DNA of 64,000 nt from Haliotis rubra (Eukaryota). The stretch is taken from NCBI RefSeq assembly GCF_003918875.1, contig NW_025765647.1:1426001-1490000 (forward strand). Reading direction: 5' to 3'. Within the stretch, counting starts at the first letter, position 1. Each line of letters opens with the position of its first letter. Below are positions 2,571-26,800 of the stretch, one piece after another. Made by a program: the position numbers and the translations under genes. The notes under the pieces were generated by a model. It searched no databases, had not been told where the DNA came from, and saw only the letters and a list, made by a program, of their open reading frames with translations.

Positions 2571-2883
2571 CAGTGTTCACGAATGGTGTTTCAAAGTAAG
2601 ATTTCATATGTCTGTCTGACCCATTGAAAAATTCACAGGACCCATAGAATAAAATTAAACACACATTTCAGATTTAATATTTCTTATATTGGCATTGAAA
2701 TTATTAACAAACATAGGATTTATAAACAGCAAACAAGTGTCACATGTCACATATAACAACTTCAGTCAAAGTCCTTGTGAAATATACAGTCAGAAACTGG
2801 GGCCGGCGGGTTGTAGATTTCTATCAGACCGTTGGCAAATCTGCCGGCTTTGTCAGAGGGTCAGACGCTATTCGTGAACACTG
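2571..2883. mobile_element. hAT-like MITE inserted in an older SINE remnant (~2470-2895)
   Basis: 14-bp TIRs CAGTGTTCACGAAT / ATTCGTGAACACTG; 5-bp duplication tgaac; removal restores ctgctgggtgaacagagg. Confidence 0.75.
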
Positions 2884-5800
2884 TGAACAGAGGCACTTTT
2901 TTTAATAAAGTTACTTTCCTAAGGTGAGGGCAGAACTGAAGTCCTACAAACTCTCAACAGTCAACCTGCCAAACATAATCACCCATCTGAGGACTCTCCT
3001 TGACAAATATTGCTTAACTTCAACTGACTTGTGACCTGGGCTCTATACACAGGACAACAGACCACAATGAAACCGAAATGTATTGTACAAGACATTGTAA
3101 TAAAGAGTTGTAATTCCATAGAATCATCCCCTTTGTTTATCACACCAACTTTCTAAATGCAACTTTTAAGAGGGTACAGAGATGTACCTGGGGTACACAT
3201 CGGTATTATCCATGCACCAACAATATATATTACTATGAAATGTACATTGTCATTACATTAACCTGCCCTTTACCTTGTCCACTTGCTGTGATTAGTACCA
3301 CGTGTGAAACATGACCGTGTACTTAGGGAAATCACACCGGATGACCCATGTCATCAGCTGATAGTAATTCATAAAGTTATCGGACGAAGATGAATAACTT
3401 AAAGCTAACTTGATAAAACTGCCATTTATGATTTGACCCACAAAATAGAGATCTTTTAACTATTAACCATTTCATACTAATGTTAGTTTATATCAAACTC
3501 ACACGATTATTTATCAAGCACCACTCCCATTAGAAAACGCCGGGTTTACCGGAAAGGATTTGACCCAAAACCGGACACAAATCAGTTTCACGAAACATCA
3601 AGAGTTAAGAAACCGGACAGTTTTATTTAACACTACGTAGGGAACCGTACACAAACAAAACATTTCATGATGATCTCTGAAGTTTACAAAAGAATAGCCC
3701 TTTTAATCTTACCCTTAAAATCTCTGTAAACGAAGTCAATGGCAACCACAAGCGTACCGGAAGAGCAATGGTGACAATAAATGACTAGGATCCCGTCTAT
3801 TGATCCGCTGAGAGGACGCGCATTGCAACAAGAATAACTTCTTTGGAGTTGGATCGCAGATCACGAGTTCAAGACCAATAATTTACTGTGGAGTCATGCA
3901 GTTTGTCCCTTCGTCAACCCGTCCCCTAGTTATAGTCCCACTTATTGTTTCATGAGAGAAAAGACAAAGAAGAAGAAAAAAACAAAACATTTTTTGACAC
4001 ATTAACTGTAAGCATTGTAAAGTCAAAAATAGACAGCAAATGAAATTATTAGCGCGTTGCAATTTCACTATTTAAAGCATTTATAGATTATGTTATGGTC
4101 TCTGCATTTATGCAGAGCACAAATCCTGTTTTCGTTTGACTGTCACGTAGTCACGCCACACTGGGAAAGACTTCTGAACTTAATTATCATCCAAAATAGA
4201 CCTTTACAGGAGAAACATAATATCATAATATTAATATACATACTTCTGATTATCAAGAATGAGTGACTGACAGGTCGACCTCATATTGAAGGAACTACAG
4301 AACGCGGCGTTAACAATGACAACAAGTAACAGCGACAACAACAACAATATCTGCTTCATTGTCATCGCAGAACGATGTCTTTGCTCCTAATATTAATCAC
4401 CAATCTCATTAAAATGGAAACATTGTTTAGCAAGAACTAACATCTGATTGAAAGAGATTGATAATTCACACTCTTGACTTGTCAACACTTCGATTAGGCC
4501 TACATTATATTGCTGGAATATTGTTGAGGTTGGCGTTATATATCGGGATAACAAAACTCAAAAAGAACTTATATAAAATTACAAGTCAGCGATTACCTTA
4601 AAGCTGTCGTTGACAGGAGTCAGTGTGGGTGAGTTGATCGGAACAGCTGTGATGTGGATCCTGACGCAGAGTTCACAATGACTCACAGGAAATCTGGCTT
4701 GTATACAGGATGCTTGCAGACAAGGCCTACAGCTTATCTATATGGTAATTTCTCAACACGCGTGGACCGCATAGTAACAGCGTATGACGTCCTACATAGG
4801 ACGTTTTCGAAAGATTTATATTCCTTATTTGTAACATGTATGCACATGAGCAGTATTTAAGCATCACCTAAATCCACGGGCATTTTTGTAAATTTTGGTC
4901 CAAACAGGCATACAACAGATGGTGGAATGCCTACTTAAAAGTCTGGGGGTCGCATGTTCACGTACTGCCAAGGCGCCAAACACATTGATGTATATATTCA
5001 TACTTGCAGTCTGTGCACTACATTTGCTGAACTGATTTAAAATATCCAAGATATTTTTATGGATTAAACTTCTTTTTTAATTTCTCTCACCAGTAGAGAG
5101 AAATTAAAAAAGAAGTTTAATCCATAAAAATATCTTGGACATCAATGTACAACTTCTAAATGCCACTGAAAGACATGATTTAAAATAGTATACGAGATGT
5201 AATGTGAGGTGGTGAGGATATAGTTTTACGCGACTTGAACCAGAAGTAGGGTCTATTTGCGCCCAACACAACTGTACATTAATTAAAGTTGAACAATCAC
5301 AAATATAAGTAGGCATACTGCAAATATAAATGTTTATGAAAAAAAAAGAAGAAAAGAGGACATGATCTTCTGCTGAGTGACTTGTATCAAGACATCAAGC
5401 AACCAATTTTTGTTTTGGGATGGAGCAAAAAAACCCAACAAAACACAAAAATATGATGCTTGTTCAATAAAAAAAAGCAGAAAATCAAACAGAAAAAGAA
5501 AGGTTAAAACGATTTAAAAGCAATTCATATATTTTGTTTAAGGTTTCTACTGGACGACATGTGCTTAGATTGTCTCATATTTGCCTGATGCAGTAACCTA
5601 CTCTAATATAGCCCTTTGGATTGAACCGTATAGAAGGTTGGGGTCCAGTGTTGCAGCAAGGGAGAATGTATCGCTTTTCTCGAGCATTGCACTTCTAAGA
5701 TTTTGTCTGATGTTAACATACCGTGGACACTCCAATAGATAGCGCTGAACTGTTTCAGGCATCTTATCACTGCATTGAGCACAAACAGGTGATACTTCTT

Positions 5801-6398
5801 TATCAACAACACTTATGTAGGCATTAAGTGCACAGTGACCAAGAAGTGGCCTATACTAGTTAAACAACTTCATCACGCCTCTTCCGACGGCGAATTTTAC
5901 AATTTTGTGCTACTGAAGAACAGAATCTGTACAGGTGTCTTCAAGCAGATCCAACATCCCACAAGTTTTGCCACTTAAAAGGAGACCGACTTCCCAAAGG
6001 CACATTCAAAATCTCGTTGACAAGGCCTGAATTCCAAATTATCAACTTCATCCTTTAGCAATCCTTACCCTATCTGCTGTTTCATAATCCTGCAAAACGA
6101 CATGAGCTGGAACCAATACAATATCACAAGATATATATTTAGTATTCACAATTGTGTTTGGTTTCAAACTTCGTAAACAATATCCTTTCTGGACCGATTA
6201 ACTCTAGAATCAATAGCTGACAATGAACCGGTAAAAATGACTGCTTCATAATTATATTTATCCTGCCATCTCAATGATTGTATAGAATTACTATAAGTTC
6301 TGCTGCATCTGGCATCATGAGGCCTGAACACAACGGAGATACTATAATCAGGGATCCAGAAAGCTCTAGCAGTACGGATCATGGCCGAATCCTTGGAG

Positions 6399-6551
6399 TG
6401 AGTGAGTGAGTTGGGTTTTACGCCGCTTTTAGCAATATCCCAACAATATCCCCAGAAATGGGCTTCACACATTGTACCCATGTGGGGAATCGAACGTAGG
6501 TTTTCGGCGTGACGAGCGAACGCCTTAACCACTAGGCTACCCCACCGCCCC
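6399..6551 (-). mobile_element. tRNA-derived SINE (family 1)
   Basis: Reverse complement begins GGGGCGGTGGGGTAGCCTAGTGGTTAA (A box), has a GTTCGATTCCC B box and ends in (TCAC)n; 14-bp TSD ccgaatccttggag at 6385-6398 and 6552-6565. Confidence 0.92.
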
Positions 6552-8893: not shown

Positions 8894-9806
8894 CACAGGG
8901 ACGTTCGACTGACCAACGTCACTGTACACTGCCTTCCTCCCAACACCACTGCTCACATTCAGCCAATGGACGCTGGTATCATCAGGAACTTTAAAGCCCT
9001 TTACAAGAAGTCGCTAGTTAAACACTACATCACATGTGCTGAGAATGGACAACCCCAGACGCTAACACTAAGATTAGCAATCCGGTTCGTTAAGTCTGCC
9101 TGGGATGAAGTGAGTGACAAGTGTATCACCAATGGCTACAAACACGTTGACATAATTCCGGACGAAGACGACGAGGACATCCCCCTTGCTGAGCTGCGGA
9201 ATTTGATGCAGCAGTTTCCACGAAGTGATGTCGACGAAGTCCCAACTGCTGAGCAGTATGTGGATGAAGACACTGTCAAATCATGAACAGAGTGCAGCAC
9301 CGACAGACGACCAGTCTGATGACGATGAACAACAAACAGTTGTCGCTCCAACAGTAGCACAAGCTCTTGAACACGCAAACAACAATTGCTGACATTCTAC
9401 GAATGTAATGGCGACGAAGGTTCGGTGAATTTAGTGATGGACTTAGTGAGGAAACTGGAAGAAATCAAACCAAGAAAACAAACATCTATGACAGACTTTT
9501 TATGGAAATTATTGCTACAGTCAACGTGATGAAGTAAGATGTGTAATGTTAATGTGAGTCAACGTGATGAAAGAATGTTATGATGTTATGATTCATTGTT
9601 CTTACTATTGACTATTGATTTATTGATATACATACATGTACGTGAATAAATTTTCAATATACATGCCTTTAGGGGAGGGGGTGACAACCGTCATGAGTAT
9701 ACACCGTCAATACGTTTTGCTTGTTTGATCCAGTTAACCGGACGCCTTCAATATCCGGACGATTTCCGAGTGTAACCAAAATGTCCGGATAAACGGGGTT
9801 CGACTG
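8894..9806 (+). mobile_element. pogo/Tigger (Tc1/mariner) DNA transposon remnant: 3' part of a DDE_1 transposase plus right TIR
   Basis: Frame reads LTNVTVHCLPPNTTAHIQPMDAGIIRNFKALY...AIRFVKSAWDEVS (pogo/CENP-B DDE_1 signature); stop at 9284-9286; terminal ...ccggataaacggggttcgactg at 9785-9806. Left TIR not found. Confidence 0.9.
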
Positions 9807-10440: not shown

Positions 10441-10700
10441 AGAAGGATAACTCTAATTGAATAGCGAACTATACTAGAGTAGCTTCCCTTTGAAAGACGT
10501 TCGAATTTCAGAACGTTTCTTCTCCATGTTAAATCAGAACAGCTGACATACTAGGTGTTGATGTAGATCTATCAATATCTACAATACACAAAGACGGAAG
10601 TGTAACCTATGCATAAATTCGGCGCATGCGTGGTCCTGTCGACTGTAGCGGCGTCATGACAACAGTTAGATCTTCCTTGTCAGCCATTTTGAAAGAGAGA
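10441..10700 (+). promoter_or_regulatory. Putative promoter of orphan gene copy A
   Basis: ETS-type CGGAAGTG (10595-10602), NRF1-type GCGCATGCGT (10622-10631), YY1-type GCCATTTT (10683-10690) and AGAGTAGCTTCCCTT (10476-10490). All are retained in copy B. Confidence 0.6.
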
Positions 10701-10770
10701 CGTTTTTGCAGTTTTATCGTACAAAATACGACTCTAAACGTGTGTCGAGCTTGAAGAGGTGGAGAAAACA

Positions 10771-12507
10771 ATGAATCCTTCTGCACCAGGTATATGGAAA
10801 TGTTCTTCTCAAAGCCGCCTGTGATTGTTATATAGTGTTTACAATGGAGAAATTCCAAAGACGATGATGTGTCGAGCCATCAACATCTGCCCAGTCAATG
10901 TCTGAATGTAGTTCTCATATTATTGAGTTGTACAATTGATATAACAGGAGGTTTTCCTCAGCTACGTAAACATTTAAGACATTTTAGATGTAGCGGTATA
11001 AATAACAACATGACGCACTGAATATTCGACTTGTTTTGAGAAGACCTAACCCAAGTTTTAGTCATCTATGTTTTCAAAATGTCGAATTACTGTGTAGACA
11101 GTTTAGTAAACTATTCACTGTCACAGTGGCTGTGACCCGCCTGCCCCCCGGGCTTCGGACAGTGGTGATGGGAGATGGGACAAGATGCCTGATAGATAGC
11201 AACACTATCTGGATGCCAGCCGGTAATGCTGTTGGCCTCTCCCTGGGTGCTGCCTACCGACAACCAATACTTATTCATTCTGGAGCTCAGCCTGGTAGCC
11301 ACCAACCACCTACAGTCACGCCTCCACCTTGCAGTGAACATGAGGAGACAACGTCTGTCTGCAAGCCAAGCTTAGCACAAGACCTGCAGCTGATGAGACC
11401 AGAGGTATGCTTTTGTATTTTCTCTACATTTGATGATTTTACAACAGAACAAAATGAGGTATAGCTACAGAATAACGGAAACCTACCAGCCATATTGTTT
11501 GGTGTCACGTCACCCTAACCCTAACGCTAACTCTAAACCTTACCTCAACCCTAAAGTTTACCGTAACCCTAAGTAAACTTCAAAGATGGCGGAAGGTATC
11601 CAGTATTCTGTAGTCTTACCCAAAATATGACATTCGTTCAATATCATAAAAGTGATACCATTATTGTATTGTCCATTAGGCCTTCTCCTGTGTTCTGCCC
11701 CAACTTGACCTACCCAATCCAGTTCCTCCTCCCCAGTCTCTAGCCAGTGTTGACATGCCTGCTATGTCTACAATAAACAACCCTAAACTCCAACTAAAGC
11801 GAAAACCTGAGCTGAAGCCCTGCAAACGAAAGCCCAAAACGTTCAGGCCAAAACCTCAACCAAAGCCTCGCATTCCTAAAGAGACAATGAGCAAGCATCA
11901 GCCTGAGAGCAAGCCCTACTTTGTGCCTCAGCCTCTTGGAGCTAAGCACATCAAAACCCAGAGCAGACCTTTGGGGAACCGTATCACTAAGCCCTCAGGT
12001 GGTAATGGTATCATTAAGTCCTCATGTAAGCTTAGTTTTGCTGAAGAATTACTGTTTGCTGATGAAGCTTACTTAAAGCCAAAGTCTGTTTTACCAAGGA
12101 CATTGCCTGTCCCTGATAAGAATGTAAAAGATAAGGCTGCTTCAGCATTAGAGCATTCTAATTCTGCGGCTACCAATGGTGCAACAGTAAATGTTAATCC
12201 TGCCAAGGCAATGGACAAAGCTGATCCTAGCTCTGATGATGAATATGATGTGGAATATCTTTACCTTACTAAAATTATTTTAAGGAAAAAGAGGAAACCC
12301 ACTGCTGAGCCCTGCAAAGAGTCCCAACCCTCACGCAAGAGGAAGTGTCCAGATGACAGCAGTGAGGTACCCCAAGCTGCAAAGCAGACAAGACTGGAGG
12401 AGCCCCAGGACGCTCTGGAGCCACACCAGGACTCTCTGGAGGACCTGGAAGCTCTCTTGGCTGAGTACAGCTCCAGTCTGTCATCTGGCACCAGGGACTT
12501 CTTCTAA
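10771..12507 (+). CDS. Orphan three-exon gene, copy A (exons 10771-10789, 11127-11404, 11680-12507; 374 aa), predicted disordered nuclear protein
   Basis: ATG AAT CCT TCT GCA CCA G|gtatat ... tcacag|TG GCT...CCA GAG|gtatgc ... cattag|GCC TTC...TTC TAA. Phases 1 and 0 join without stops (1125 nt); the splice sites are conserved in copy B; AATAAA at 12699-12704. Confidence 0.75.
11458..11620. mobile_element. MITE with internal telomere-like (CCCTAA) repeats, in intron 2 of copy A
   Basis: ~35-bp imperfect TIRs starting GGTA; flanks caaaatga / caaaatat; empty site caaaataa at 17150-17157 in unit B. Confidence 0.8.
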
Positions 12508-13552
12508 ATACTGTAAGGTGGAGGGGACAGGTAGGTATATATTGGTTTATAGTGGGTATGCTGATGTTTATACATCATCATCAGCGTAAGTTTGATGACT
12601 GGATAGGAATGGCTGTGAATGGCGGTTTTGGGGTTGTTTGTTTACAATGGAACTGAAATATATGTATCTGTTTTAACGTTATGACAACATTGTTTCTTAA
12701 TAAAATATCTCTTTGCAGTTTAAATAGTAGTTATGTCTTATTTTAAATACTGAACTTGTGTTCTGTTGTTAGTAGAGGAACTATTTTAGTGGAGTGGTGT
12801 TAATATTTCCAATCATAAGATACTCAAGTGGCAAATGTGGAGAGTAAACAGCATTGCCAAGGCAATGTTATTCTGTATATGCACTGGTTGCGTTTGTAAA
12901 CACAGTTTTATATTGTCACCATAATCATATCGCTCTTCAAAGACAATTCACCATGGTTGTCTTTGATTTCAAACCTGAGTGTCACACAAATCAAGCTTGA
13001 CCAGAGCAATTGTCCTGAACCATAAACTCCTGCAAAAAAGATGTCATACTAATGAGAGTACATATGAGCCGCTTCAATTATTACTGTATCTGAGAGTGAG
13101 TAACATGTTTATATGATACTTGCAGTGTAGTGTAAGCAGACAACAGATGTAATGTACAATGAATATGTCCTCTGGTGCAGTACTTAGAGCCAGGTATCCT
13201 TCTGTGTGTAGTAACACAAACATGAAAACATATTTGGTGTGGTTAAAGTGAGTACCGATCATTCTTCAAACCAACAGACAGACATCCCCATGATGGTGTT
13301 GTAATTCTTGCATAGCCTCAAGGTTTCTTGAGTGTACTGAGATTATACTATAAGTGTGTGACTGATAAACAATTGCAATAGTTTGATAACACAGTTACTG
13401 AGTAAATTAAAATATATGAGTATTTATTGCCATATCTAAGAGTGAACTAAATGCAATAGTTACACAATACAGTGTCTGGATTAACAGAGGGTATGTCCAT
13501 TGGGTTTGTACTCTGGTACAGGACTTATCCTCAGGTATTCCTCTCTGTGTAG

Positions 13553-13979
13553 TAGTGTTGGGAATTGGTTAAAATCTCATAATTGATGATTGTTTCATTG
13601 CAACCGATCAATCATCGAAAATAATTGGTTAGCGTCATTTATGAAATTTTCCTGTTTATTTTTGTTAATGCACAAAAACATAAAGAAAAAACATGTAGTT
13701 CTTGGGAGGTTTTTATTGCAAATTTCACATCTTGAAAGGATGACTTGTATGTTAGGAACATAAATGTCTTGGGGTCTTTAAGATAAATTCAATCATGACT
13801 TGGAACGAGCTTGTAGTGCTCAGGAAATGTAACCGACAAAACCAACCTTGTGAAAAATACTGTTAATGCAAAAGGTGTTCCAGAATTGCTTGTGTTCGAT
13901 TATGAGAAAACATGATCGATTGCTTGGTCGTTTAGTCACTGCAACATTTCGTTTATTTCAATTAATCGGACCACCACTA
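13553..13979 (+). mobile_element. hAT-type MITE (~430 bp)
   Basis: TAGTG...CACTA termini; perfect 8-bp TSD ctgtgtag (13545-13552, 13980-13987). Confidence 0.9.
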
Positions 13980-14974
13980 CTGTGTAGCTACACAAACATT
14001 GAACATACTTGGTACAATGTGAGTACCAGTATCATATTTTCATAGCATCATATTCATAGTACCTGTATAGCCTCGGCTATTTAGCAGCACAGACATTGAA
14101 CACAATTGGGAAATTGAGAGAGTACCTGTATCCCATTCCAAACCAAGAGACATGTATAACCTATGAGGTTTTTTGTAGCCATGGGTGTTCTCTGAGTGTA
14201 GCAGCACAAACATGGAACATATTGTGGTTTTGAACCAATGGGTGAGTGGTTCAGATAATAGGTGATTTTTCAGCATTGTGGCATGTAAAGTGATCACACC
14301 TAGACCAGACAAACCATGACGATACACAACTTAGCAGATAACAGCTTGTCCTCCATAAAGTAATAATCATACCACGCCGATTATGTGGCCAACACAGTCT
14401 TAAGAACAGGTGACTGGTCAACGTTTTCTGATCTCCACACAAAAGGTGGGTCACACTTTGGGACACTTGTGATGATTTCATAACACATTAATGTAAACAT
14501 GATTTAGTTACAAATATTGGAATGGAACTTTTACTATGGGGGAACCAAATCGTTTTTACATTAAACTACATAGCAAAGCTGGTCCTCTATGAAGTTCTGT
14601 TACTATTCAGCAACCATTCCCACCAACACATTATTCTGACAAACATGAATGACTGGTGAACCTTTCACACCTGGACACACGAGGTGGGTCAGTTAGAAGA
14701 GCACTGGTCACACGTGCTTTGGGATAGCATTGGATTAATGTATTTCTTGATGTGTATTCTTACGAGCCCATGGATCAGTTACTAAGGAAAGTGGCTGTAT
14801 TACATTGAAATGACATGAATCGTGTTAGCATGTAAGATAATCATGTTAAACCTGACAAACGTGATCAGTGAGTAACGACCCCTGGTATAACCATGAAACA
14901 CACAGAGGTCTTCCACCAAGTAGTCCTTATACCCTGCAGCTATTGTCACCAACACATTCTGAACACAAACATAT

Positions 14975-15600
14975 CCGTAAGTCCGTCCTTCCGTTATACT
15001 TCCATTTCCCATTCTCACCCGTCCGTATGTCCGTCGTCCCGTTATACTTTCATTCCCCATGCCCTCAATGTCCCCCATTCTCACCTGTCCGTGTGCCCTT
15101 CCTCCAGTTTACATGCATTCCCCATGTGCCAAATTTCCCCCATTCTCACCCGTCCGTATTACCGCCGTCCCGTTATACTTCCATTCCCCATGCCCCAAAT
15201 GTCCCCCATTCTCACCTGTCTGTATGTCCGCCCTCCTGTTATACTTCCATTCCCCCGCCCTGCACACATATCTCCCTTTTCACCCATGCCCCATTATCAT
15301 TTGTCCGTATGTGCGTCCTCCCGTTATACTCCCATTCCCCGTGCCCCATTATCATTTGTCAGTATGTGCGTCCTCCCGTTATACTTCCATTCCCCATGCC
15401 CCCAGTGTCCCCCATTCTCACCCGTCCGTATGTCCGTCTTCCCGTTACACTTCCATTCCCAATGCCCCCAGTGTCCCTCATTCTCACCTGTCTGTATGTC
15501 CGCCCTCCCGTTATACTTCCATTCCCCATGCCCCAAATGTCTCCCATTCTCACCTGTCTGTATGTCCGCCCTCCCGTTATACTTCCATTCCCCCGCCCTG
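14975..15600. repeat. 66-bp pyrimidine-rich minisatellite
   Basis: Unit ccgttatacttccattccccatgccccaaatgtcccccattctcacctgtctgtatgtccgccctc, recurring at ~15377, 15443, 15509 and 15575. Confidence 0.9.
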
Positions 15601-15989
15601 CACACATATCTCCCTTTTCACCATGTGCCCATACCTCCGCTCTACCACTTACCTTCAATACTATTAAACAATTTCAAGTTTCAAACCTCTGTTCTCATTC
15701 ATGAAAGATAATTTACATTATCATTTCTCAAACACAAAATCATATTACCTACTTTGTGGAAAATTATTTTACAGTACCTTTTATCCATTTCACATTGAAT
15801 ATTCTTTATTTTACTCGATTTTATTCCTGTACCCAACATAAACAAAATTTATTTAATAACTATACAACGACTGCCTTGTGGCAGTGTATATTACCTAACG
15901 CGGAACGCTCCACCACCATCTTGTTAAACATAACCGTTTAAGCCAAATACTTTCACTATTCTTCTAAACAGTCATAAAATCCTTATTCA

Positions 15990-16250
15990 AGAAGGATAAC
16001 TCTATTTACATAGCAAACTCTACTAGAGTAGCTTCCCTTGGAAAGACGTTTGGATTTATGAACGTTTCTTCTCCATGTTAAATCGGAACAGCTGACATAC
16101 TTGGTGTTGATGTAGATCTATCAACATCTACAATACACATAGACGGAAGTGTCACTTATGCATAAATTCGACGCATGCGTGTTCCTGTCGACTGTAGCGG
16201 TGTCATGACAACAGTTAGACCTTTCTGTGTCAGCCATTTTGAAAGAGAGA
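15990..16250 (+). promoter_or_regulatory. Putative promoter of orphan gene copy B
   Basis: CGGAAGTG 16144-16151, ACGCATGCGT 16171-16180, GCCATTTT 16233-16240, AGAGTAGCTTCCCTT 16025-16039. Confidence 0.55.
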
Positions 16251-16319
16251 CATTTTCGCTGTTTCATCGTGAACAGTACGACTCTAAAAGAGCGCAGAGC
16301 TTAAGGAGTGGAGAAAATA

Positions 16320-18036
16320 ATGAATCCTTCTACACCAGGTATATTGAAATGATCTTCTCAAAGTCGCCTGTGATCAACAATATATGTCTCATCAGGAATG
16401 TAGTTCTCATATTATTGAGCTGTACAGTTGATATGACAGGAGGTTTGCCTCGGCCACGTAAACATTTAGGAGACTTTTAGATGTAGCGGTATAAATAACA
16501 ATTTGACGCACTACATAATCGACTTGTTTTGAGAAGACCTTTGTTTTTAGTCATCTGTGTTATCAAAATGGCGAATTACTCTGCAGGCAGTTTAGTATTA
16601 TTCACTGTCACAGTGTCTGTGACCCGCCTGCCCCCCAGGCTTCCGACAGTGGTGATGGGAGATGGGACAAGATGCCTGATAGATAACAACACTATCTGGA
16701 TGCCAGCCGGTAATGCTGTTGGCCTCTCCCTGGGTGCTGCCTACCAACAGCCAAGACCTAACTCAAGTTTTAGTCATCTGTGTTGTCAAAATGGCGAATT
16801 ACTCTGCAGGCAGTTTAGTAAACTATTCACTGTCACAGTGTCTGTGACCCGCCTGCCCCCCTGCCAACAGTGGTGATGGGAGATGGGATAAGATGCCTGA
16901 TAGATAACAACACTATCTGGATGCCAGCCGGTAATGCTGTTGACCTCTCCCTGGGTGCTGGCTACCAACAGCCAAGACTCCTTCATTCTGGTATCCGTCA
17001 GCCTCCTATGGTCCAGCCACCACCTTGCAGTAGACATAGGGAGACAATGTCTGTCTGCCAGGGCAGCTTAGCACTGGACCTGCAGCTGATGAGACCAGGG
17101 GTATGCGTCTGTATTAATTGTCTGTACATTTGACAATTTTATAACATCACAAAATAAGACATTCGCTCAATATCATAAAAGTGATACCATTACTGTATTG
17201 CCCATTAGGCCTTCTCCTGTGTTCTGCCCCAACTTGACCTACCAAGTCCAGTTCCTCTTCCCCTGTATCTATCCCATGTTGACAAGCCAGCTATGCATAC
17301 AGCAAACAACCCTAAACTCCAACCAAAGCAAAAACTTAAGCAGAAGGCCTGCAAACGAAAGCCTAAGCCTTTCAGGCCAAAACCTCAACCACTGCCTCAC
17401 ATTCCTAAAGAGAAAGTGAGCAAGCATCAGCCTGAGAGCAAGCCCTACTTTGTGCCTCAGCCTCTTGGAGCTAAGCACATCAAAACCCAGAGCAGACCTT
17501 TGGGGAACCGTATCACTAAGCCCTCAGGTGGTAATGGTACCATTAAGTCATCATGTAAGCTTAGTTTTGCTGAAGAATTACTGTTTGCTGATGAAGCTTA
17601 CTTAAAGCTAAAGTCTGTTTTACCAAGGTCATTGCCTGTGCCTGATAAGAATGTAAAAGATAAGGCTGCTTCAGCATTAGAGCATTCTAATTCAGCGGCT
17701 ACCACTGTTGCAACAGTAAATGTTAATCCTGCCAATGTGATGGACAAAGCTGATCCTAGCTCTGATGATGAATATGATGTGGAATATCTTTACCTTACTA
17801 AACTTATTATAAGGAAAAAGAGGAAACCCACTGCTGAGCCCTGCAAAGAGTCTCCACCCTCACGCAAGAGGAAGTGCCCAGATGACGGCAGTGAGGTGCC
17901 CCAAGCTGCAAAGCAGACAAGACTGGAGGATCCCCAGGACGCTCTGGAGCCACACCAGGACTCTCTGGGGGACCTGGAAGCTCTCTTGGCTGAGTACAGC
18001 TCCAGTCTGTCATCTGTCATCAGGGACTTCTTCTAA
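16320..18036 (+). pseudogene. Orphan gene copy B (exons 16320-16338, 16839-17100, 17209-18036), frameshifted in exon 2
   Basis: Net 4-bp deletion near 16861 gives TGA at 16874-16876; partial duplication of intron 1/exon 2 (~16533-16752); exon 3 remains open; AATAAA 18192-18197. Confidence 0.7.
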
Positions 18037-18659
18037 ATACTGTAAGGTGGAGGGGACAGGTAGGTATATATTAGTGTATTGTGGGTATGTTCCTGTTCAT
18101 CATCCAGCAAGTGTATGGTTTAAGAGACTGGATATTGATTGAAGGTTGGGGGTTGTTTGCTTACGATTCTACCTTGATTACATTGTTTCTCAATAAAATA
18201 TCTCTTTGCAGTTTAAATAGTAGTTATGTCTTATTTTAACAACTGAAGTTGAATTCTGTTGTTAGCAGAACTATTTCTGTGGAGGGCTGTTAGTGTTTCC
18301 AAACATTAGTTGATCAACAGGCAATTGTGGGAAGTGCATATGAGCAGCAGTTATTGGGAGTACATATGAGCAGCTGCATTTATTACTGATTGAACGAGTG
18401 AATTAAAGACAATACTAACATAATACAGTACCAGGTGACAACAGTTTGTATGTCCATTTGATTGGTCCTCTGCTTGATGAGAGCAATTCAAGCCGAACTA
18501 TTACTGCATATGAGCAGCTAAATATATTACTGTATCTTGGAGTGACTTACATGATACTGACAATAGTAACACATATAATGTAAGCAGACAACAGATGTAA
18601 TGTACATTGAGTAGGTCCTCTGGTGCAGGACTTAGTCTCAGGTAGTCCTCTGTGTGTAG

Positions 18660-19089
18660 TAGTGGTGGTCCGATTAATTGAAATAATCGAAGATTGGTCG
18701 CAGTGACTAAATGACCAAGCAATCGGTCATGTTTTCTCATAATCGAACACAAACAATTCTGGAACACTAGTTTTCATCAACAATATTTTTCACAAGGTTG
18801 GTTTTGTCTGTTACATTTTATAAGCACTACAAGCTTGTTCCAAGTCATCAATGAATTTATCATAAAGACATCAAGAAATTTATGTTCCTAACATACTAGT
18901 CATCCTTTAAAGATGTGAAATTTTGCCCCCCCCCAAAAAAAAAATTAAAAAAAATAAGTACATGTTATTTCCTTATATTTTTGTGCATTAACAAATTTCA
19001 TAAATGACGCTAACCAATTATTTTCGATGATTGATCGGTGGTAATGAACCAATCACCAATTATGACATTTTAACCAATTCCCAACACTA
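18660..19089 (-). mobile_element. hAT-type MITE, same family as 13553-13979, opposite orientation
   Basis: TAGTG...CACTA termini; perfect 8-bp TSD gtgtgtag (18652-18659, 19090-19097). Confidence 0.9.
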
Positions 19090-20853: not shown

Positions 20854-23800
20854 ATCTCTCCTCCATCCTCCATTCTCCCCTCCATCCTCCTTACTTCCCC
20901 CTTCATCTCCCTTACTTCCCCTCTGTCCTCCATCCTCCATCCATCCTTCTCCCTCCCTCCACCCACCTCCCTCCTCCATTCCATCCTCCATTCCTCCTCC
21001 TCTCCTCCTTCCCTCCTCCTTCCTGTCCTTCTTCCTCTCCCTCTTTCCTCATCTTCCTTCCCTCCATCCTCCCTCCTTCCATCCCTCTTTTCCATCCTCC
21101 TCCTCCTCCTTCCTCCTTCCTTCCTCCCTCCATCCACTCCATTCCATCCTCCATCTCCCTCCTTCCTCCTTCCTTCCTCCCTCCTCTCCTCTCCTCCTTC
21201 CTTCCTTCCTTCCTCCTCCTTCCTCCCTCCCTCCCTCCTCCTCCACCCTCCTCCTCCTTCCTCTCCATTTCCTCCTTCCCTCCTTCCTCTCCATCCTCCA
21301 TCCTCCATTCCTCCCTCCTCCCTCCATCCTCCTCCTTCCTCCTCCACTCCATCTCCTCCTTCCCTCNNNNNNNNNNNNNNNNNNNNNNNNNNNNNNNNNN
21401 NNNNNNNNNNNNNNNNNNNNNNNNNNNNNNNNNNNNNNNNNNNNNNNNNNNNNNNNNNNNNNNNNNNNNNNNNNNNNNNNNNNNNNNNNNNNNNNNNNNN
21501 NNNNNCCTCCTTCCCTCCCTTCCTCTTCCTTCTCCTTCCTCCATCCCTTCCATTCCCTCCTTCCTCCCTCCTCCTCCTCCCTCCTTCCATCCTTCCTTCC
21601 ATTCCATCCTTCCTTCCTCCTTCCTTCCCTCCTTCCTCCATTCCTCCTCCTTCCCTCCTTCCTCCCTTTCCTCCTCCATCCTTCCTCCTTCCATTCCTTC
21701 CTCCCTCCATCCTCCATCCTCCCTCCCTCCATCTCCNNNNNNNNNNNNNNNNNNNNNNNNNNNNNNNNNNNNNNNNNNNNNNNNNNNNNNNNNNNNNNNN
21801 NNNNNNNNNNNNNNNNNNNNNNNNNNNNNNNNNNNNNNNNNNNNNNNNNNNNNNNNNNNNNNNNNNNNNNNNNNNNNNNNNNNNNNNTCCTTCCTTCCTC
21901 CATCCTCCTCCCTCCTTCCATCCTTCCTCCTTCCTCCTCCTTCCTCCTTCTCCCTTCCTCCTCCTTCCTCCTTCCTTCCTCCTTCCTTCCTCCTTCTTCC
22001 TTCCTCCTCCTTCCTTCCCATCCTCCATCCCTCCTCTCCTCCTCCTTCCTCCTTCCATCCTCCTCCTCCTCCTCTCCTCCTTCCTCATCCTCTTCCTCCT
22101 TCCTCCTCCTCCTCCATCCTCCATCCTCCTCCATTCCTTCTTCCTCCTTCCTCCATCCTTCCATCCTCCTCCTTTCCTTCATTTCCTTGTCATCCCTCCA
22201 TCCTTCCTCTCCTTCCTCCATCCTTCCTCCATCCATCCTCCCTTCCATTTCCTCCTTCCTCCATCCTCCATCCTCCATCCTCCTTCCTCCCTCCTCTCCT
22301 CCCTCCCTTCCATCCTCCTTCCTCCATCCCTCCATCCTCCATCCTCCATCCTTCCTCCATCCTCCATTCCTTCCTCCATCCTTCTNNNNNNNNNNNNNNN
22401 NNNNNNNNNNNNNNNNNNNNNNNNNNNNNNNNNNNNNNNNNNNNNNNNNNNNNNNNNNNNNNNNNNNNNNNNNNNNNNNNNNNNNNNNNNNNNNNNNNNN
22501 NNNNNNNNNNNNNNNNNNNNNNNNNNNNNNNNNNNNNNNNNNNNNNNNNNNNNNNNNNNNNNNCTCCCTCCTCCCTCTTCCTCCATCCTTCTCCCTCCTN
22601 NNNNNNNNNNNNNNNNNNNNNNNNNNNNNNNNNNNNNNNNNNNNNNNNNNNNNNNNNNNNNNNNNNNNNNNNNNNNNNNNNNNNNNNNNNNNNNNNNNNN
22701 NNNNNNNNNNNNNNNNNNNNNNNNNNNNNNNNNNTCCATCCTCCTTCCTTCCCTTCCTCCATCCCTCCTTTCCTCCTCCCTCCCTCCTTCCTCCTCCTCC
22801 CTCCCTCCTCCTTCCTCCTCCTTCCTTCCTCCTTCCTCCTCCTTCCTCCTTCCTCCTCCTCCATCCTCTTCCTCCTCNNNNNNNNNNNNNNNNNNNNNNN
22901 NNNNNNNNNNNNNNNNNNNNNNNNNNNNNNNNNNNNNNNNNNNNNNNNNNNNNNNNNNNNNNNNNNNNNNNNNNNNNNNNNNNNNNNNNNNNNNNNNNNN
23001 NNNNNNNNNNNNNNNNNNNNNNNNNNNNNNNNNNNNNNNNNNNACTCCCTCCATCCTCATCCTCCTCCTCCTCCTCCCTCCATCCTCCTCCTCCTTCCTC
23101 CCTCCTTCCTCCTCCATTCTCCTCCCTCCTTCCTCCATCCCTCCTTCCTGTTCCTCCATCCATCCTTCCTTCCCTCCATTCCTTTTCCTTCCTTCCTCCT
23201 CGTCCTCCTCCTTCCTTCCTCCCTCCTGTCCTTCCGTTCCTCCTCCTCCTTCCTTGTCCTCCATCCTCCTCCTTCTCTTCCTCCTCCATCCTTCCTCCAT
23301 TCTTCCTCTGTCCTCCTTCCTTCCTCCATCCTCCTCCTCCTCCTCCATCCTCCTGTCCCTCCTGTCCTTCCTTCCTCCTTCCTCCATCTTCCTTTTCCTC
23401 CTCATCCTTCCTCCGTCCTCCTTCATTCCCTCTTCCTCCTCCTTCCTCCTTCCGTCCTCCCTCCGTCCACTCCTGTCCTCCTTGTGTGTTCCTCCTTCCT
23501 CCTCCCTCTGTTCCCTCCACTGTCCGTCCTTCCTCCTCCATTCCTGTCCTCCTCTCCATCCTCCTTCCTCCCTCCTGTTCCTCGTTCCTTCCTTCCATCC
23601 TTCCTCCTCCTCCATCCTTCCTCCTCCATCCTCCTTCCTCATCCTCCATCCCTCCCTCCATCCTTCCCTCTCCTTCCTCCCTCCTCCCTTCCATCCCTCC
23701 ATCCTCCCTCCTTCCTGTTTCCCTCCTCCTTCCTCCTCCTCCTCCTCCTCCTCTCATCCTCCTTCCATCNNNNNNNNNNNNNNNNNNNNNNNNNNNNNNN

Positions 23801-26800
23801 NNNNNNNNNNNNNNNNNNNNNNNNNNNNNNNNNNNNNNNNNNNNNNNNNNNNNNNNNNNNNNNNNNNNNNNNNNNNNNNNNNNNNNNNNNNNNNNNNNNN
23901 NNNNNNNNNNNNNNNNNNNNNNNNNNNNNNNNNNNNNNNNNNNNNNNNNNNNNNNNNNNNNNNNNNNNNNNNNNNNNNNNNNNNNNNNNNNNNNNNNNNN
24001 NNNNNNNNNNNNNNNNNNNNNNNNNNNNNNNNNNNNNNNNNNNNNNNNNNNNNNNNNNNNNNNNNNNNNNNNNNNNNNNNNNNNNNNNNNCCTTCCTCCT
24101 CTCCATCCCTCCTCCATCCTCCCTCCCTCCATCCTCCTCCTCCTCCTTCTCCTCCTCCTCCATCCTTCCTCCTTCCATCCTCCTTCCTCCTTTCCTTCCC
24201 TTCTTCCCTTCCCTCCTCCTCCTCCTCCTCCATCCTCCTCCCTCCTTCCTCCATCCTTCCTCCATTCCCTCCTTCCTCCCTCCTCCTCCCTCTTCCTNNN
24301 NNNNNNNNNNNNNNNNNNNNNNNNNNNNNNNNNNNNNNNNNNNNNNNNNNNNNNNNNNNNNNNNNNNNNNNNNNNNNNNNNNNNNNNNNNNNNNNNNNNN
24401 NNNNNNNNNNNNNNNNNNNNNNNNNNNNNNNNNNNNNNNNNNNNNNNNNNNNNNNNNNNNNNNNNNNNNNNNNNNNNNNNNNNNNNNNNNNNNNNNNCAT
24501 CCATTCCTCTCNNNNNNNNNNNNNNNNNNNNNNNNNNNNNNNNNNNNNNNNNNNNNNNNNNNNNNNNNNNNNNNNNNNNNNNNNNNNNNNNNNNNNNNNN
24601 NNNNNNNNNNNNNNNNNNNNNNNNNNNNNNNNNNNNNNNNNNNNNNNNNNNNNNNNNNNNNNNNNNNNNNNNNNNNNTCCTCCTTCCTCTTCCCTCCTCC
24701 CTCCATCCTTCCCTCCATCCTCCATCCTCTTCCTTCCATCCCTCCTTCCATCATCCTTCCTCCTTCCATCCATTCCATCATCCCTCCTCCTCCTCCTCCT
24801 TCCTCCCTCCTTCCCTCCCTCCATCCCTCCTCCTTCCTCCTTCCTCCCTCCCTCCTCCATCCCTCCTTCTCCTCCCTCCTTCCATCCTCCTCCATCCTTC
24901 TCTTCCCTCCATCCCTCCATCCTCCCCTCCTTCCCTCCTTCCCTCCTCCTTCCCTCCATCCTCCCTCTTCCTTCCTCCTCCTCTCCTCTCACCTCCATCC
25001 ATCCTTCCTCCATCCTCTCCTTCCTCCACTCCATCCATCCTCTCCTCCTCCTCCTTCCATCCTCCTCCTTCCTTCCCTCTCCCTCCCTCCTTCCTCCATC
25101 CTCCTCCTCCTCCTTCCATCCTCCCTCCTCCATCCTTCCTCCATCTCTTTCCTCTTCCTCCCTTCCTCCCTCCATTCCTTCCTCCTCCTTCCTCCTATCC
25201 TTCCTCCATCTCCTTCCATCCTTCCTTCCTTCCTCCATCCTCCTTCCTCCTCCATCCTCCTCCTTCCTCCTCCCTCCTTCCTTCCTCCTCCCTCCTTCCT
25301 CCATCCTCCTCCCTCCTTCCTTCTCCTCCATCCCCTCCTCCTTCCTCCTTCCCTCCTCCTTCTCCTCCTCCATCTTCCCTTTCCTCCTTCCTCCTTCCTT
25401 CCTCTTCCATCCTCTCCTCCTTCCTCTCATCCTTCCTCCTCCATCCTCCATCCTCCTTTCCTCCATTCCTCCTTCCTTCCTCCTTCCTCCTTTCCATTCC
25501 ATCCTTCCTTCTTCTCCTTCCTCCATTCCTCCTTCCTCCTCCTCCTCCTTCCATCCTCCTCCTTCCTCCATCCTTCCACTCTTCCATTCCTCCTCCTTCT
25601 TTCCTCTGTTCCTCTCCTTCCTCCTCCATCCTTCTTCCTCCATCCTTCCTCCTCCCTTCCTCCTTCCTCCTCCTTCCTCCTCCTTCCTCCTCCATCCTCC
25701 TCCATCCTCCTCCATCTTCCTCCTCCTTCCTTCCATCCTTCCTCCATCCTTCCTTCCTCCTCCTTCCTTCCTCCTCCTCCTCCTTTCCTTCCTTCCTCCT
25801 TCCTTCCTCCATCCCTCCATTTGTTCCTTCTCCTCCTCCATATCCTCCTTCCTCCTCTCCTTCCATCCTTCCTTTCCTCCTTCCTTCCCTTCCTCCCTCC
25901 ATCCTTCCTCCATCCTCCCTCCTTCCTCCTCCCTCCTTCCATTCCTCTCTCCTTCTCCATCCTCCATCCTTCCCTCCTCCTATTCCTCCTTCCTCTCTGT
26001 CCTCCTTCCTTTCCCTCCATTCCTCTTCCTCCATCCACCTTTCCTCCTCCTTCCATCCTCTTCCCTCTCTTCCATCCTCCTTCCTCCTCTTCCTCCTCCA
26101 TCCTCCTCCATCCTCCTTCCATCCTCCTTCCTTTTCCTCCTCCTCCTTCCTTCTTCCTCATTCCTCCCTTCCTCCATCCTCCTTCCTCCTTCCATCCTTC
26201 CTCCTCCCTCCATCCTCCTCCTCCATCCTTCCATTCCTTCCTCCTTTCCTCCATCCTTCCTTCCTCCTCCTCCTTCCTCCGTCCTTCCTTCCTCCTCCTC
26301 CTCCTCCCTCTTCCTCCTTCCTCCTTGTCCTCTCTCCTTCCTTCTTCCTCCATCCTTCCTCCTCCTTCCTTCCTTCCGTCCACCTCCTCCATCTGTCCTC
26401 CTTCCTCCTCCTCCATCCACCCGTCCTCCTTCCTTCCTCCTCCTTCCTCCCTTCCTCCATCTGTCCTTCCTCCTCCATTCCTCCTTCCTCCTCCATCCAT
26501 CCTTCCTCCTCCTCCTTCCTTCCTTCCGTCCTCTTCTCCTCCTCCTTTCCCTCCTGTCCTCCTCCTTCCTCCATTCCGTCCTCCTCCATTCCATTCCTCC
26601 TGTCCTCCGTGTTGTCATCCGTCTTCCTCCATCCTTCCGTCCATTCCGTCCTTCCTCCATTCCGTCCTCCATTCCTCCCTGCTTCTCCATATCTCCTCCT
26701 TCCTCCGTCACTTCCCCTCCATCCTCCTTCCTTCACCTCCATCCCATCTCCACTTCCCCTCCATCCTCCCCTACTTCTCCCTCCATCCTCGGTCCTACTT

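What the first reader, a model, noticed from the sequence alone, without database searches (positions are those of the whole stretch)
10771..18036. Tandemly duplicated spliced orphan gene encoding a disordered nuclear protein with an acidic LxxLL tail
Seen: three exons join in frame into 374 aa (MNPSAPVAVTRLPPGLRTVVMGDGTRCLIDSNTIWMPAGNAVGLSLGAAY...RDFF). Start, splice sites, stop and AATAAA are conserved in two diverged copies, each behind an ETS/NRF1/YY1-type motif cluster. The protein has a Pro/Lys-rich region, a SIM-like SSDDEYDVEYL, NLS-like RKKRK and RKRK, and a C-terminal acidic LEDLEALLAEY (LxxLL). I recognise no folded domain. Inference: a lineage-specific transcription/chromatin co-regulator built from short linear motifs and sitting at the edge of a ~26 kb repeat block, loosely analogous to macrosatellite-borne germline or early-embryo genes. 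This is the best candidate for an undescribed system in the window.
Basis: partly seen in the sequence, partly recalled or inferred. Interest (0 to 1): 0.75.

Follow-up and report, generated by a model that had tools for sequence, protein, structure and literature searches.

The report
Abalone-only disordered nuclear protein gene pair
This is a real, spliced gene for a 374-residue, mostly unstructured and probably nuclear protein; its family was found only in abalones (Haliotis), it sits beside a damaged tandem twin, and it is an ordinary lineage-restricted gene whose function is still unknown.

Summary
The window is Haliotis rubra contig QXJH01000168.1. It matches locus L003 at 100% identity over 21.4 kb.

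**Gene model.** A contig from a small, RNA-like public run joins 10789 to 11127 exactly.

**Copy 2 is not intact.**
- Exon 2 carries a 221-bp internal duplication.
- A 4-nt deletion breaks the frame set by the exon-1 ATG.

**History of the pair.** The same gene, 66-bp minisatellite, gene arrangement occurs in H. asinina, so the duplication is old. Gene conversion has since homogenised the gene bodies within each species.

**Family.**
- It has several members per species: 369-384 aa models in H. asinina, H. rufescens, H. cracherodii and H. rubra.
- A profile search of 1.84 billion representative proteins found only Haliotis members.
- Pfam, PDB and ESM Atlas gave nothing. AlphaFold2 gave mean pLDDT 45.

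**Selection and motifs.**
- Deep paralogues show purifying selection (omega 0.32-0.5, Fisher p 1e-6 to 4e-9).
- Constraint is strongest on a basic Pro/Lys block and on the C-terminal third.
- That third holds a bipartite NLS match and the acidic LEDLEALLAEY helix.
- Three promoter footprints are invariant across six paralogues.

**Annotation.** RefSeq mis-models this H. rubra locus as a 206-aa chimera with a transposase fragment.

The co-regulator function is untested. The macrosatellite analogy is not supported.

The parts
10595..10692 (+). Core promoter of copy 1. Motifs: CGGAAGTG (10595-10602, ETS-type), CGCATGCG (10623-10630, NRF1-type half site), GTCATGACAAC (10653-10663, unassigned) and TGTCAGCCATTTTGA (10678-10692, YY1-type).
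   Evidence: The last three blocks are invariant across six paralogues from two species; CGGAAGT is kept in five of six. The RNA-like contig of run X1 begins at 10676. Factor binding was not tested.
10676..10789 (+). Exon 1 of copy 1: 5' UTR from at or before 10676, then CDS 10771-10789 (MNPSAP + 1 nt).
   Evidence: An X1 contig covers 10676-10786 and joins to 11124 onwards.
10790..11126 (+). Intron 1 (337 nt, GT-AG).
   Evidence: The joint 'skips 337, GT..AG (cut +3)' appears in X1 only and is absent from three DNA-like runs. X1 has no depth inside the intron.
11127..11404 (+). Exon 2 (278 nt). It encodes the conserved N-terminal block ..TVVMGDGTRCLIDSNTIWMPAGN.. and ends ..LQLMRPE.
   Evidence: AF2 predicts a weak beta hairpin here.
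11405..11679 (+). Intron 2 (275 nt, GT-AG). It holds a very high-copy repeat insertion (~11440-11620) that is absent from copy 2, whose intron is 108 nt.
   Evidence: depth 10^4-10^5 in DNA runs. The splice junction was not among the listed joints, and X1 contigs cross both borders unspliced. Splicing is supported by GT-AG ends, frame conservation and the RefSeq models of sister species.
11680..12507 (+). Exon 3 coding part (275 codons + TAA). It contains the basic Pro/Lys block, KPYFVPQPLGAKHIK, SDDEYDVEYLYLTK, the bipartite NLS match RK-x12-RKRK, the acidic helix LEDLEALLAEY and the ..TRDFF end.
12508..12720 (+). 3' UTR with AATAAA at 12699-12704.
   Evidence: The block around AATAAA is conserved in copy 2, in H. 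asinina and in the unplaced H. rubra unit. The poly(A) site was not observed in reads.
15008..15593 (.). 66-bp minisatellite between the two gene copies.
   Evidence: The homologous 66-bp array lies between the two H. asinina genes (L001 7868-8452).
16145..16338 (+). Copy 2 promoter, 5' UTR and exon 1 (ATG 16320, donor after 16338).
16545..16978 (+). 221-bp tandem duplication inside copy 2. It duplicates the end of intron 1 and the first half of exon 2, giving acceptors at 16614 and 16839.
   Evidence: period 221, 2.0 copies, 93% matches.
16839..17100 (+). Copy 2 exon 2b (262 nt against 278). A 4-nt deletion shifts the frame relative to the exon-1 ATG. The resulting 18-codon ORF stops at TGA 16874-16876, which overlaps the in-frame ATG at 16876 (TGATG).
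   Evidence: ORF end at 16876.
17209..18036 (+). Copy 2 exon 3: intact, 275 codons + TAA, 87% aa identity to copy 1 with no indel. AATAAA follows at 18192-18197.

Best explanation
Copy 1 (10676-~12720, + strand) is a functional three-exon gene of a Haliotis-restricted, multi-copy family.

Shown:
- Its product is a 374-aa, 41-kDa, Pro/Ser/Lys-rich protein predicted to be almost wholly disordered.
- It sits in an old tandem pair that predates the H. rubra / H. asinina split. Gene conversion has kept the gene bodies alike within each species.
- In H. rubra the downstream copy is damaged in exon 2. It is either a pseudogene or at best encodes an N-truncated product.

Inferred (untested):
- The protein enters the nucleus through its conserved bipartite NLS match (RK-x12-RKRK).
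- There it acts as a scaffold or adaptor made of short linear motifs.
- The modules under strongest constraint are the basic Pro/Lys block with KPYFVPQPLGAKHIK and the acidic amphipathic C-terminal helix LEDLEALLAEY. These would serve as docking or activation surfaces.
- The TATA-less promoter carries ETS-, NRF1- and YY1-type footprints, which suggests broad, proliferative or germline expression rather than a tissue-specific secreted role.
For: - Gene model and frame.
- Exact intron-1 junction in one contig of run X1. That run has an mRNA-like footprint, with no depth upstream, in intron 1 or beyond about 12583. The junction is absent from three DNA-like runs.
- Models of 369-384 aa with the same ends in four Haliotis species.
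- Purifying selection between deep paralogues: omega 0.32-0.5, Fisher p 6e-7 to 4e-9. The lowest pN/pS lies over the basic block and the C-terminal third.
- Promoter blocks invariant across six paralogues with dS about 0.4.
- Genus restriction: only 5 hits, all Haliotis, among 1.84e9 representatives. No Pfam, PDB or Atlas match.
- Disorder: AF2 mean pLDDT 45, pTM 0.16. The Atlas's own model of the H. asinina relative P0001 has pLDDT 0.42.
- NLS pattern match with nearly invariant K/R columns.
- Old duplication plus conversion: the same gene, 66-bp minisatellite, gene layout occurs in H. asinina. Quartet site patterns give 0:5:0 in the 5' UTR for positional orthology, against 93:2 in the gene body for within-species clustering.
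- Copy 2 defects.
Against: - No localisation, binding or expression-by-tissue data exist. Every functional motif is 4-20 residues long and could match by chance.
- The intron-2 junction was not seen in the reads shown, and X1 contigs cross both of its borders unspliced.
- X1's library kind is not on record, and its contigs differ 2-10% from the window, so they come from a relative or a paralogue.
- Omega between the tandem copies is 0.65-0.96, so constraint on this particular subfamily is weak.
- RefSeq's own model at this locus is a different, chimeric 206-aa product.
- Absence outside Haliotis depends on which mollusc proteomes are in the library.
Confidence: 0.6

Rival explanations
1. The ~5.5 kb unit is a repetitive or mobile element, and the ORF is a transposon or virus-derived gene rather than a host gene.
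For: - The unit occurs at least three times in H. rubra (two in the window and one on the unplaced contig L006).
- Other family members are dispersed on other chromosomes.
- TE fragments lie nearby: a DDE_1 piece at 8966-9256 and an Exo_endo_phos ORF at 42-848.
Against: - No transposase, RT, integrase or capsid domain is present.
- I did not screen the unit borders for terminal repeats.
- Introns sit at conserved positions, the promoter is an ordinary conserved one, and the layout is positionally orthologous in H. asinina.
- Copy number is low.
- The profile search found nothing viral or TE-like.
Confidence: 0.04
2. The ORF is not translated: the locus is a non-coding or decaying transcript, and the 374-aa frame is kept only by recent duplication and gene conversion.
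For: - Omega is 0.96 between the two window copies.
- Copy 2 and the L006 copy are both disrupted.
- The H. rubra RefSeq annotation does not call the 374-aa product.
- The protein has no fold.
Against: - The frame is open and colinear in at least 10 genes of four species.
- dN is significantly below dS between paralogues with dS about 0.4 (p down to 4e-9).
- Constraint is clustered in discrete blocks.
- There is no indel in 828 nt of exon 3, while the flanks carry many.
Confidence: 0.06
3. The gene is real, but the protein's role is not transcriptional. It could be, for example, a basic chromatin or nucleolar structural protein, an RNA-binding disordered protein, or a cell-cycle-regulated substrate or adaptor.
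For: - The most constrained central block has pI 11 and is Lys/Pro-rich, like histone H1 tails or nucleolar proteins.
- No DNA-binding or coactivator domain is present.
- The promoter type is typical of housekeeping or proliferation genes.
Against: Nothing here discriminates this reading from the co-regulator reading. The invariant acidic LxxLL-containing helix fits an interaction or activation module at least as well.
Confidence: 0.3

Closest known systems
RefSeq 'uncharacterized protein' / misnamed Gnomon models of Haliotis (P0001 and P0007 H. asinina; P0002, P0003 and P0008 H. rufescens; P0004 H. cracherodii; P0005 and P0006 H. rubra)
   Same: - Same three-exon layout and the same N-terminus (MNPS..) and C-terminus (..TRDFF).
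- 69-78% identity over exon 3.
- Same conserved blocks and the same promoter footprints.
   Different: - The window's copy 1 is itself not annotated as such. RefSeq has a chimeric 206-aa model at this locus.
- Source names such as titin-like, TonB-like and EspI-like probably reflect low-complexity similarity; no Pfam domain backs them.
Taxonomically restricted (orphan) genes encoding intrinsically disordered proteins
   Same: - No detectable homologue outside one genus, and no domain.
- Low predicted order, a fairly high omega, and small tandem or dispersed gene families.
   Different: - This one has clear purifying selection on discrete motifs and a strongly conserved promoter.
- It is therefore not a young, barely constrained proto-gene.
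LxxLL (NR-box) coactivators and acidic activation-domain proteins (recalled from general knowledge)
   Same: An invariant LEALL sits inside a predicted acidic amphipathic helix near the C-terminus, next to NLS-type basic clusters.
   Different: - There is no homology to any coactivator family.
- A five-residue motif is not diagnostic.
- No nuclear-receptor link is shown.
Macrosatellite-borne genes such as DUX4 in D4Z4
   Same: A gene sits in a kilobase-scale tandemly repeated unit near other repeats.
   Different: - There are only two units here (a third is unplaced), and the gene has introns.
- The neighbouring 26 kb block is unrelated simple sequence and a 36-bp satellite.
- The pair is stable since before the H. 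rubra / H. asinina split.

Membership tests
Haliotis-restricted MNPS..TRDFF family (unnamed; RefSeq uncharacterized proteins) | Full-length colinear similarity with significant E-value | tested here: met
   E-values of 1e-124 to 3e-97 and 69-78% identity to nine 246-424 aa Haliotis proteins; alignment.
Haliotis-restricted MNPS..TRDFF family (unnamed; RefSeq uncharacterized proteins) | Same exon structure and promoter blocks | tested here: met
   Exon 3 starts at the same ..RPE|AFSC.. boundary in L001, L002 and L004. Promoter blocks are invariant in six genes.
LxxLL nuclear-receptor coactivators | LxxLL motif in an amphipathic helix | tested here: met
   LEALL at residue 355 lies in a predicted helix at 355-368 of P0001. 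The column is invariant.
LxxLL nuclear-receptor coactivators | Homology to a known coactivator family or domain | tested here: not met
   No Pfam hit at E up to 10. No PDB profile hit. No relative outside Haliotis.
LxxLL nuclear-receptor coactivators | Ligand-dependent binding to a nuclear receptor / transactivation | not testable with these tools
   Needs binding and reporter assays.
Macrosatellite-borne gene (D4Z4/DUX4 type) | The gene is contained in each unit of a long array of kilobase units | tested here: not met
   tblastn finds only two copies in the 64 kb window. The adjacent repeats are (TCC)n-like tracts, 42-82 bp minisatellites and a 36-bp satellite.
Transposon or viral ORF | Transposase, RT, integrase or capsid domain, or relatives in mobile elements | tested here: not met
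   Positional orthology with H. asinina.
SUMO-interacting motif (SIM) | Hydrophobic core [VIL]x[VIL][VIL] or [VIL][VIL]x[VIL] next to acidic or Ser residues | tested here: not met
   Copy 1 has no match to either core pattern. SSDDEYDVEYL has the acidic flank only.
HP1 chromoshadow-binding PxVx[LMI] proteins | PxVx[LMI] pentamer | tested here: not met
   Paralogues read PTVVM or PTVVL, but the window's copy 1 reads RTVVM, so the pattern is absent.
Classical bipartite NLS cargo | [KR][KR]-x10-12-[KR]3+ pattern, conserved | tested here: met
   RKPTAEPCKESQPSRKRK at residue 304. The K/R columns are at least 90% conserved. Import itself was not tested.

The most novel reading that the evidence does not exclude
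The family is an abalone-specific nuclear regulator, possibly germline- or embryo-expressed. Its tandem pair evolves in concert by gene conversion. In H. rubra the damaged downstream copy may still make an N-truncated isoform, by termination-reinitiation at the overlapping stop-start TGATG at 16874-16878.
Probability: 0.12. Interest if true: 0.5.

Novelty: new member of a known kind. Interest (0 to 1): 0.3.

Why it matters
- It corrects a RefSeq mis-annotation in the H. rubra reference, where a chimeric 206-aa model stands in place of the conserved 374-aa gene.
- It defines a genus-restricted, motif-built protein family with unusually clear promoter footprints.
- It gives a clean small example of an old tandem pair kept alike by gene conversion while one member decays.
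- It does not open a new kind of system. Lineage-restricted disordered proteins are common in mollusc genomes, and the function remains untested.

Tried and rejected
- **Domain and fold searches came up empty.** Pfam on exon products and on all 13 alignment members, a PDB profile search and two ESM Atlas queries gave nothing usable. I did not run fold search, because the model (pLDDT 45) is too poor for matches to mean anything.
- **HP1-binding PxVxL idea for the N-terminal block.** Dropped because copy 1 reads RTVVM.
- **SIM reading of SSDDEYDVEYL.** It fails the core consensus.
- **PIP-box reading of the ..SSGTRDFF end.** By eye it does not fit Qxx[LIM]xx[FY][FY].
- **Macrosatellite analogy.** Rejected.
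- **Literature.** Searches for the LOC and XP identifiers and for three family peptides returned nothing. The H. rubra resequencing paper PMC9327721 singles out other scaffolds as outliers, not this one.
- **Earlier scan notes.** Searches by sequence and by words were blank.
- **Reads.** The two run searches found no run on record as RNA. The single read-laying run used contigs only, so it gave no expression level, strand or intron-2 junction.
- **Masked stretches.** Locus L003, fetched to identify the contig, extends over the first masked N stretches of the window. I neither read nor used those letters; only the 1-21366 match was used.
Full report
**What is there.** Reading 10500-14500 and joining 10771-10789, 11127-11404 and 11680-12507 gives an open 1125-nt frame. 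Both introns are GT-AG and the stop is TAA. A second unit lies about 5.5 kb downstream. Direct-repeat families pair 10291-~14500 with 15840-~20000 at 73-95% identity, and this covers promoter, introns and flanks as well as exons.

**Source.** A 206-aa RefSeq protein of Haliotis rubra (P0013, XP_046563378.1) contains the window's exon 2 letter for letter. Its contig matches the window at 100% over 21,366 bases. The window is therefore H. rubra GCA_003918875.1, QXJH01000168.1. L003 also runs over the first masked N stretches of the window; I did not read or use those letters.

**Copy 2 is not intact.**
- Exon 1 (ATG 16320), both acceptors, the donor at 17100, exon 3 (17209-18036) and AATAAA (18192) are all present.
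- A 221-bp tandem duplication (16545-16978) repeats the end of intron 1 and the first half of exon 2.
- The second exon-2 copy has a 4-nt deletion.
- From the exon-1 ATG the products are 18 aa (acceptor 16839) or 93 aa (acceptor 16614).
- The 18-codon frame ends in TGA at 16874-16876. This overlaps an in-frame ATG at 16876, from which about 350 codons remain open through exon 3. That is a curiosity, not evidence of use.
- A loose-end consensus in run X8 ends in CCTGCCA just before 11159, like the copy-2b junction sequence. This hints that the variant is real and not an assembly slip, but it needs long reads.

**Transcription and splicing.**
- No run on record as RNA holds the stretch.
- Run X1 (41 M letters, kind unrecorded) covers only 10652-10819 and 11072-12583. 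It has no depth upstream, in intron 1 or further downstream.
- One 363-nt X1 contig joins 10786 to 11124 with GT..AG ends and a 3-base ambiguity. That is exactly the predicted junction 10789>11127.
- Three DNA-like runs lack this joint.
- X1 contigs differ 2-10% from the window, so they come from a relative or a paralogue.
- The intron-2 junction was not among the joints listed, and X1 contigs cross both of its borders unspliced. Intron 2 splicing therefore rests on GT-AG ends, frame conservation and the gene models of sister species.

**Family and range.**
- The word search with exon 3 found 11 proteins, all from Haliotis (asinina, rufescens, cracherodii, rubra). Nine score E 1e-124 to 3e-97 at 69-78% identity; six of them are full-length models of 369-384 aa, the rest are 246, 373 and 424 aa. 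The other two are a 248-aa model covering 39% of the query and a frameshifted 165-aa fragment. All carry uninformative source names.
- The alignment shows conserved blocks:
  - an N-terminal ..PTVVMGDGTRCLIDNNTIWIPAGN..;
  - LDLQLMRPEAFSCVLPQLDLP across the exon 2/3 junction;
  - a basic KPCKRKP..RPKPQPKPRIPKEK block followed by KPYFVPQPLGAKHIK;
  - SDDEYDVEYLYLTKLILRKKRKP, then SRKRK;
  - the acidic LEDLEALLAEY and a ..TRDFF end.
- A profile of this alignment was scored against all 1.84 billion representative proteins. Only five passed E 0.001, and all are family members or fragments from Haliotis records or a fragmented assembly.
- Pfam, a PDB profile search and the ESM Atlas gave nothing.
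- AlphaFold2 with the 13-row alignment gave mean pLDDT 45 and pTM 0.16. It predicts only a weak hairpin at 18-36 and three helices at 222-237, 292-306 and 355-368.
- The protein has 13% Pro and an overall pI of 9.1. A central block has pI 11, and the C-terminal third is mildly acidic (pI 5.4).

**Selection.** Nei-Gojobori estimates were made on exon 3.

| Comparison | dS | omega | Test |
|---|---|---|---|
| Deep paralogues | 0.37-0.47 | 0.32-0.59 | Fisher p 6e-7, 9e-7, 4e-9 (three pairs tested) |
| Tandem-pair clade, between species | 0.17-0.22 | 0.63-0.73 | p 0.09 and 0.036 (two pairs tested) |
| The two window copies | 0.067 | 0.96 | p 0.86 |

Sliding windows place the lowest pN/pS (0.29-0.42) over the basic block with KPYFVPQPLGAKHIK and over the last ~95 residues. 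The linkers are near 0.8-1.1. This is the pattern expected of a disordered protein that works through short motifs.

**History of the pair.**
- H. asinina has the same arrangement: P0007, then a homologous 66-bp minisatellite, then P0001, with 5.85 kb spacing.
- In a four-way alignment, informative sites in the 5' UTR (0:5:0) and upstream (9:10:1) pair each H. rubra copy with the H. asinina copy at the same position.
- Intron 1 through exon 3 shows 93 sites against 2 for within-species pairing.
- The protein tree likewise groups copies by species within a 100/99-supported clade.
- The simplest reading is an old duplication followed by gene conversion of the gene body in each lineage.
- This explains exon 3b-c being 3-4% diverged while flanks are 13-28% diverged. 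It also means that conserved sites between the two copies say little by themselves.
- A third unit, 83% identical and frameshifted in exon 3, sits on an unplaced 8.4 kb H. rubra contig.
- Other family members lie singly on other chromosomes or contigs.

**Promoter.** Alignment of six genes from two species shows three invariant islands within otherwise diverged sequence: CGCATGCG, GTCATGACAAC and TGTCAGCCATTTTGA. CGGAAGT is kept in five of six. The X1 contig begins at 10676, at the last island. The ETS, NRF1 and YY1 assignments rest on consensus matches recalled from general knowledge; binding is untested.

**Annotation.** RefSeq's model at this locus joins three pieces: a pogo/Tigger-type DDE_1 fragment (8966-9256), an extended exon 2 (11096-11404) and a 25-nt piece of exon 3 in another frame (12284-12308).

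**Function.**
- Shown: a real gene, under constraint, genus-restricted and predicted to be disordered.
- Inferred: nuclear import through the conserved bipartite NLS match, and action as a motif-built adaptor.
- Whether that adaptor is a transcription co-regulator, a chromatin or nucleolar protein, or something else cannot be decided here.
- The SIM reading fails its consensus, and an HP1-type PxVxL is absent from this copy.
- The macrosatellite analogy is not supported.

**Verdict.** The finding is a lineage-restricted gene family of ordinary kind, already predicted in sister species and mis-annotated here.

Noticed in passing
window 8966-9256 (+), with 11096-11404 and 12284-12308: The RefSeq H. 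rubra model XP_046563378.1 (LOC124272259, 206 aa) is a chimera. It joins a pogo/Tigger-type DDE_1 transposase fragment to an extended exon 2 and to an out-of-frame sliver of exon 3.
   Followed up: yes
window ~11440-11620 (intron 2 of copy 1): An insertion absent from copy 2 contains degenerate telomere-like CCCTAA repeats. Its depth in three DNA-like runs is 10^4-10^5, against hundreds for the flanks, so it is a very high-copy element. There is no second copy in the window.
   Followed up: partly
window 13553-13981 and 18658-19089: A ~430-bp element is present in both duplicate units in opposite orientation (84% identity over 446 nt).
   Followed up: partly
window 14868-15711: The 66-bp minisatellite between the genes creates long open frames (202-278 aa, Pro/Ser-rich) in three + strand frames. 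These are repeat artefacts, not genes. The array is conserved in H. asinina (L001 7868-8452).
   Followed up: partly
window 20926-26680, with N-masked stretches at 21367-24677: A several-kb polypyrimidine (TCC/TCCT/CCTCCTC)n tract has extreme GC and AT skew and produces spurious ORFs of up to 2034 aa. The gene table for this contig has a 241-aa gene on the minus strand that runs into it. The masked letters were not looked up.
   Followed up: no
window 38764-46507: A 36-bp satellite (AATCTAGCTGGTATAACAAGTTAACATTCTACAGGT) of about 222 copies at 86% matches, with 69- and 105-bp higher-order periods.
   Followed up: no
window 61081-62499 (+): A single-exon 472-aa ORF has an N-terminal F-box (Pfam F-box-like, E 2.9e-8).
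   Followed up: no
window 42-848 (-): A 268-aa ORF carries an Exo_endo_phos domain (E 3e-17). It is part of a 326-aa called gene on this contig and may be a LINE-type endonuclease remnant or a host nuclease.
   Followed up: no
L006 (H. rubra QXJH01002820.1, 8448 bp) 2574-6500: A third copy of the ~5.5 kb unit, about 83% identical to both window units, has a frameshift near codon 40-45 of exon 3. RefSeq models it as a 165-aa 'mypop-like' protein (P0011). It could be a paralogue, a divergent haplotig or an assembly indel.
   Followed up: partly
L001 (H. asinina CM074527.1) 9053-9598: A 182-bp tandem repeat (3 copies, 98% matches) lies just upstream of the downstream gene's promoter in H. asinina. 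It has no counterpart among the window's tandem repeats of score 200 or more.
   Followed up: no
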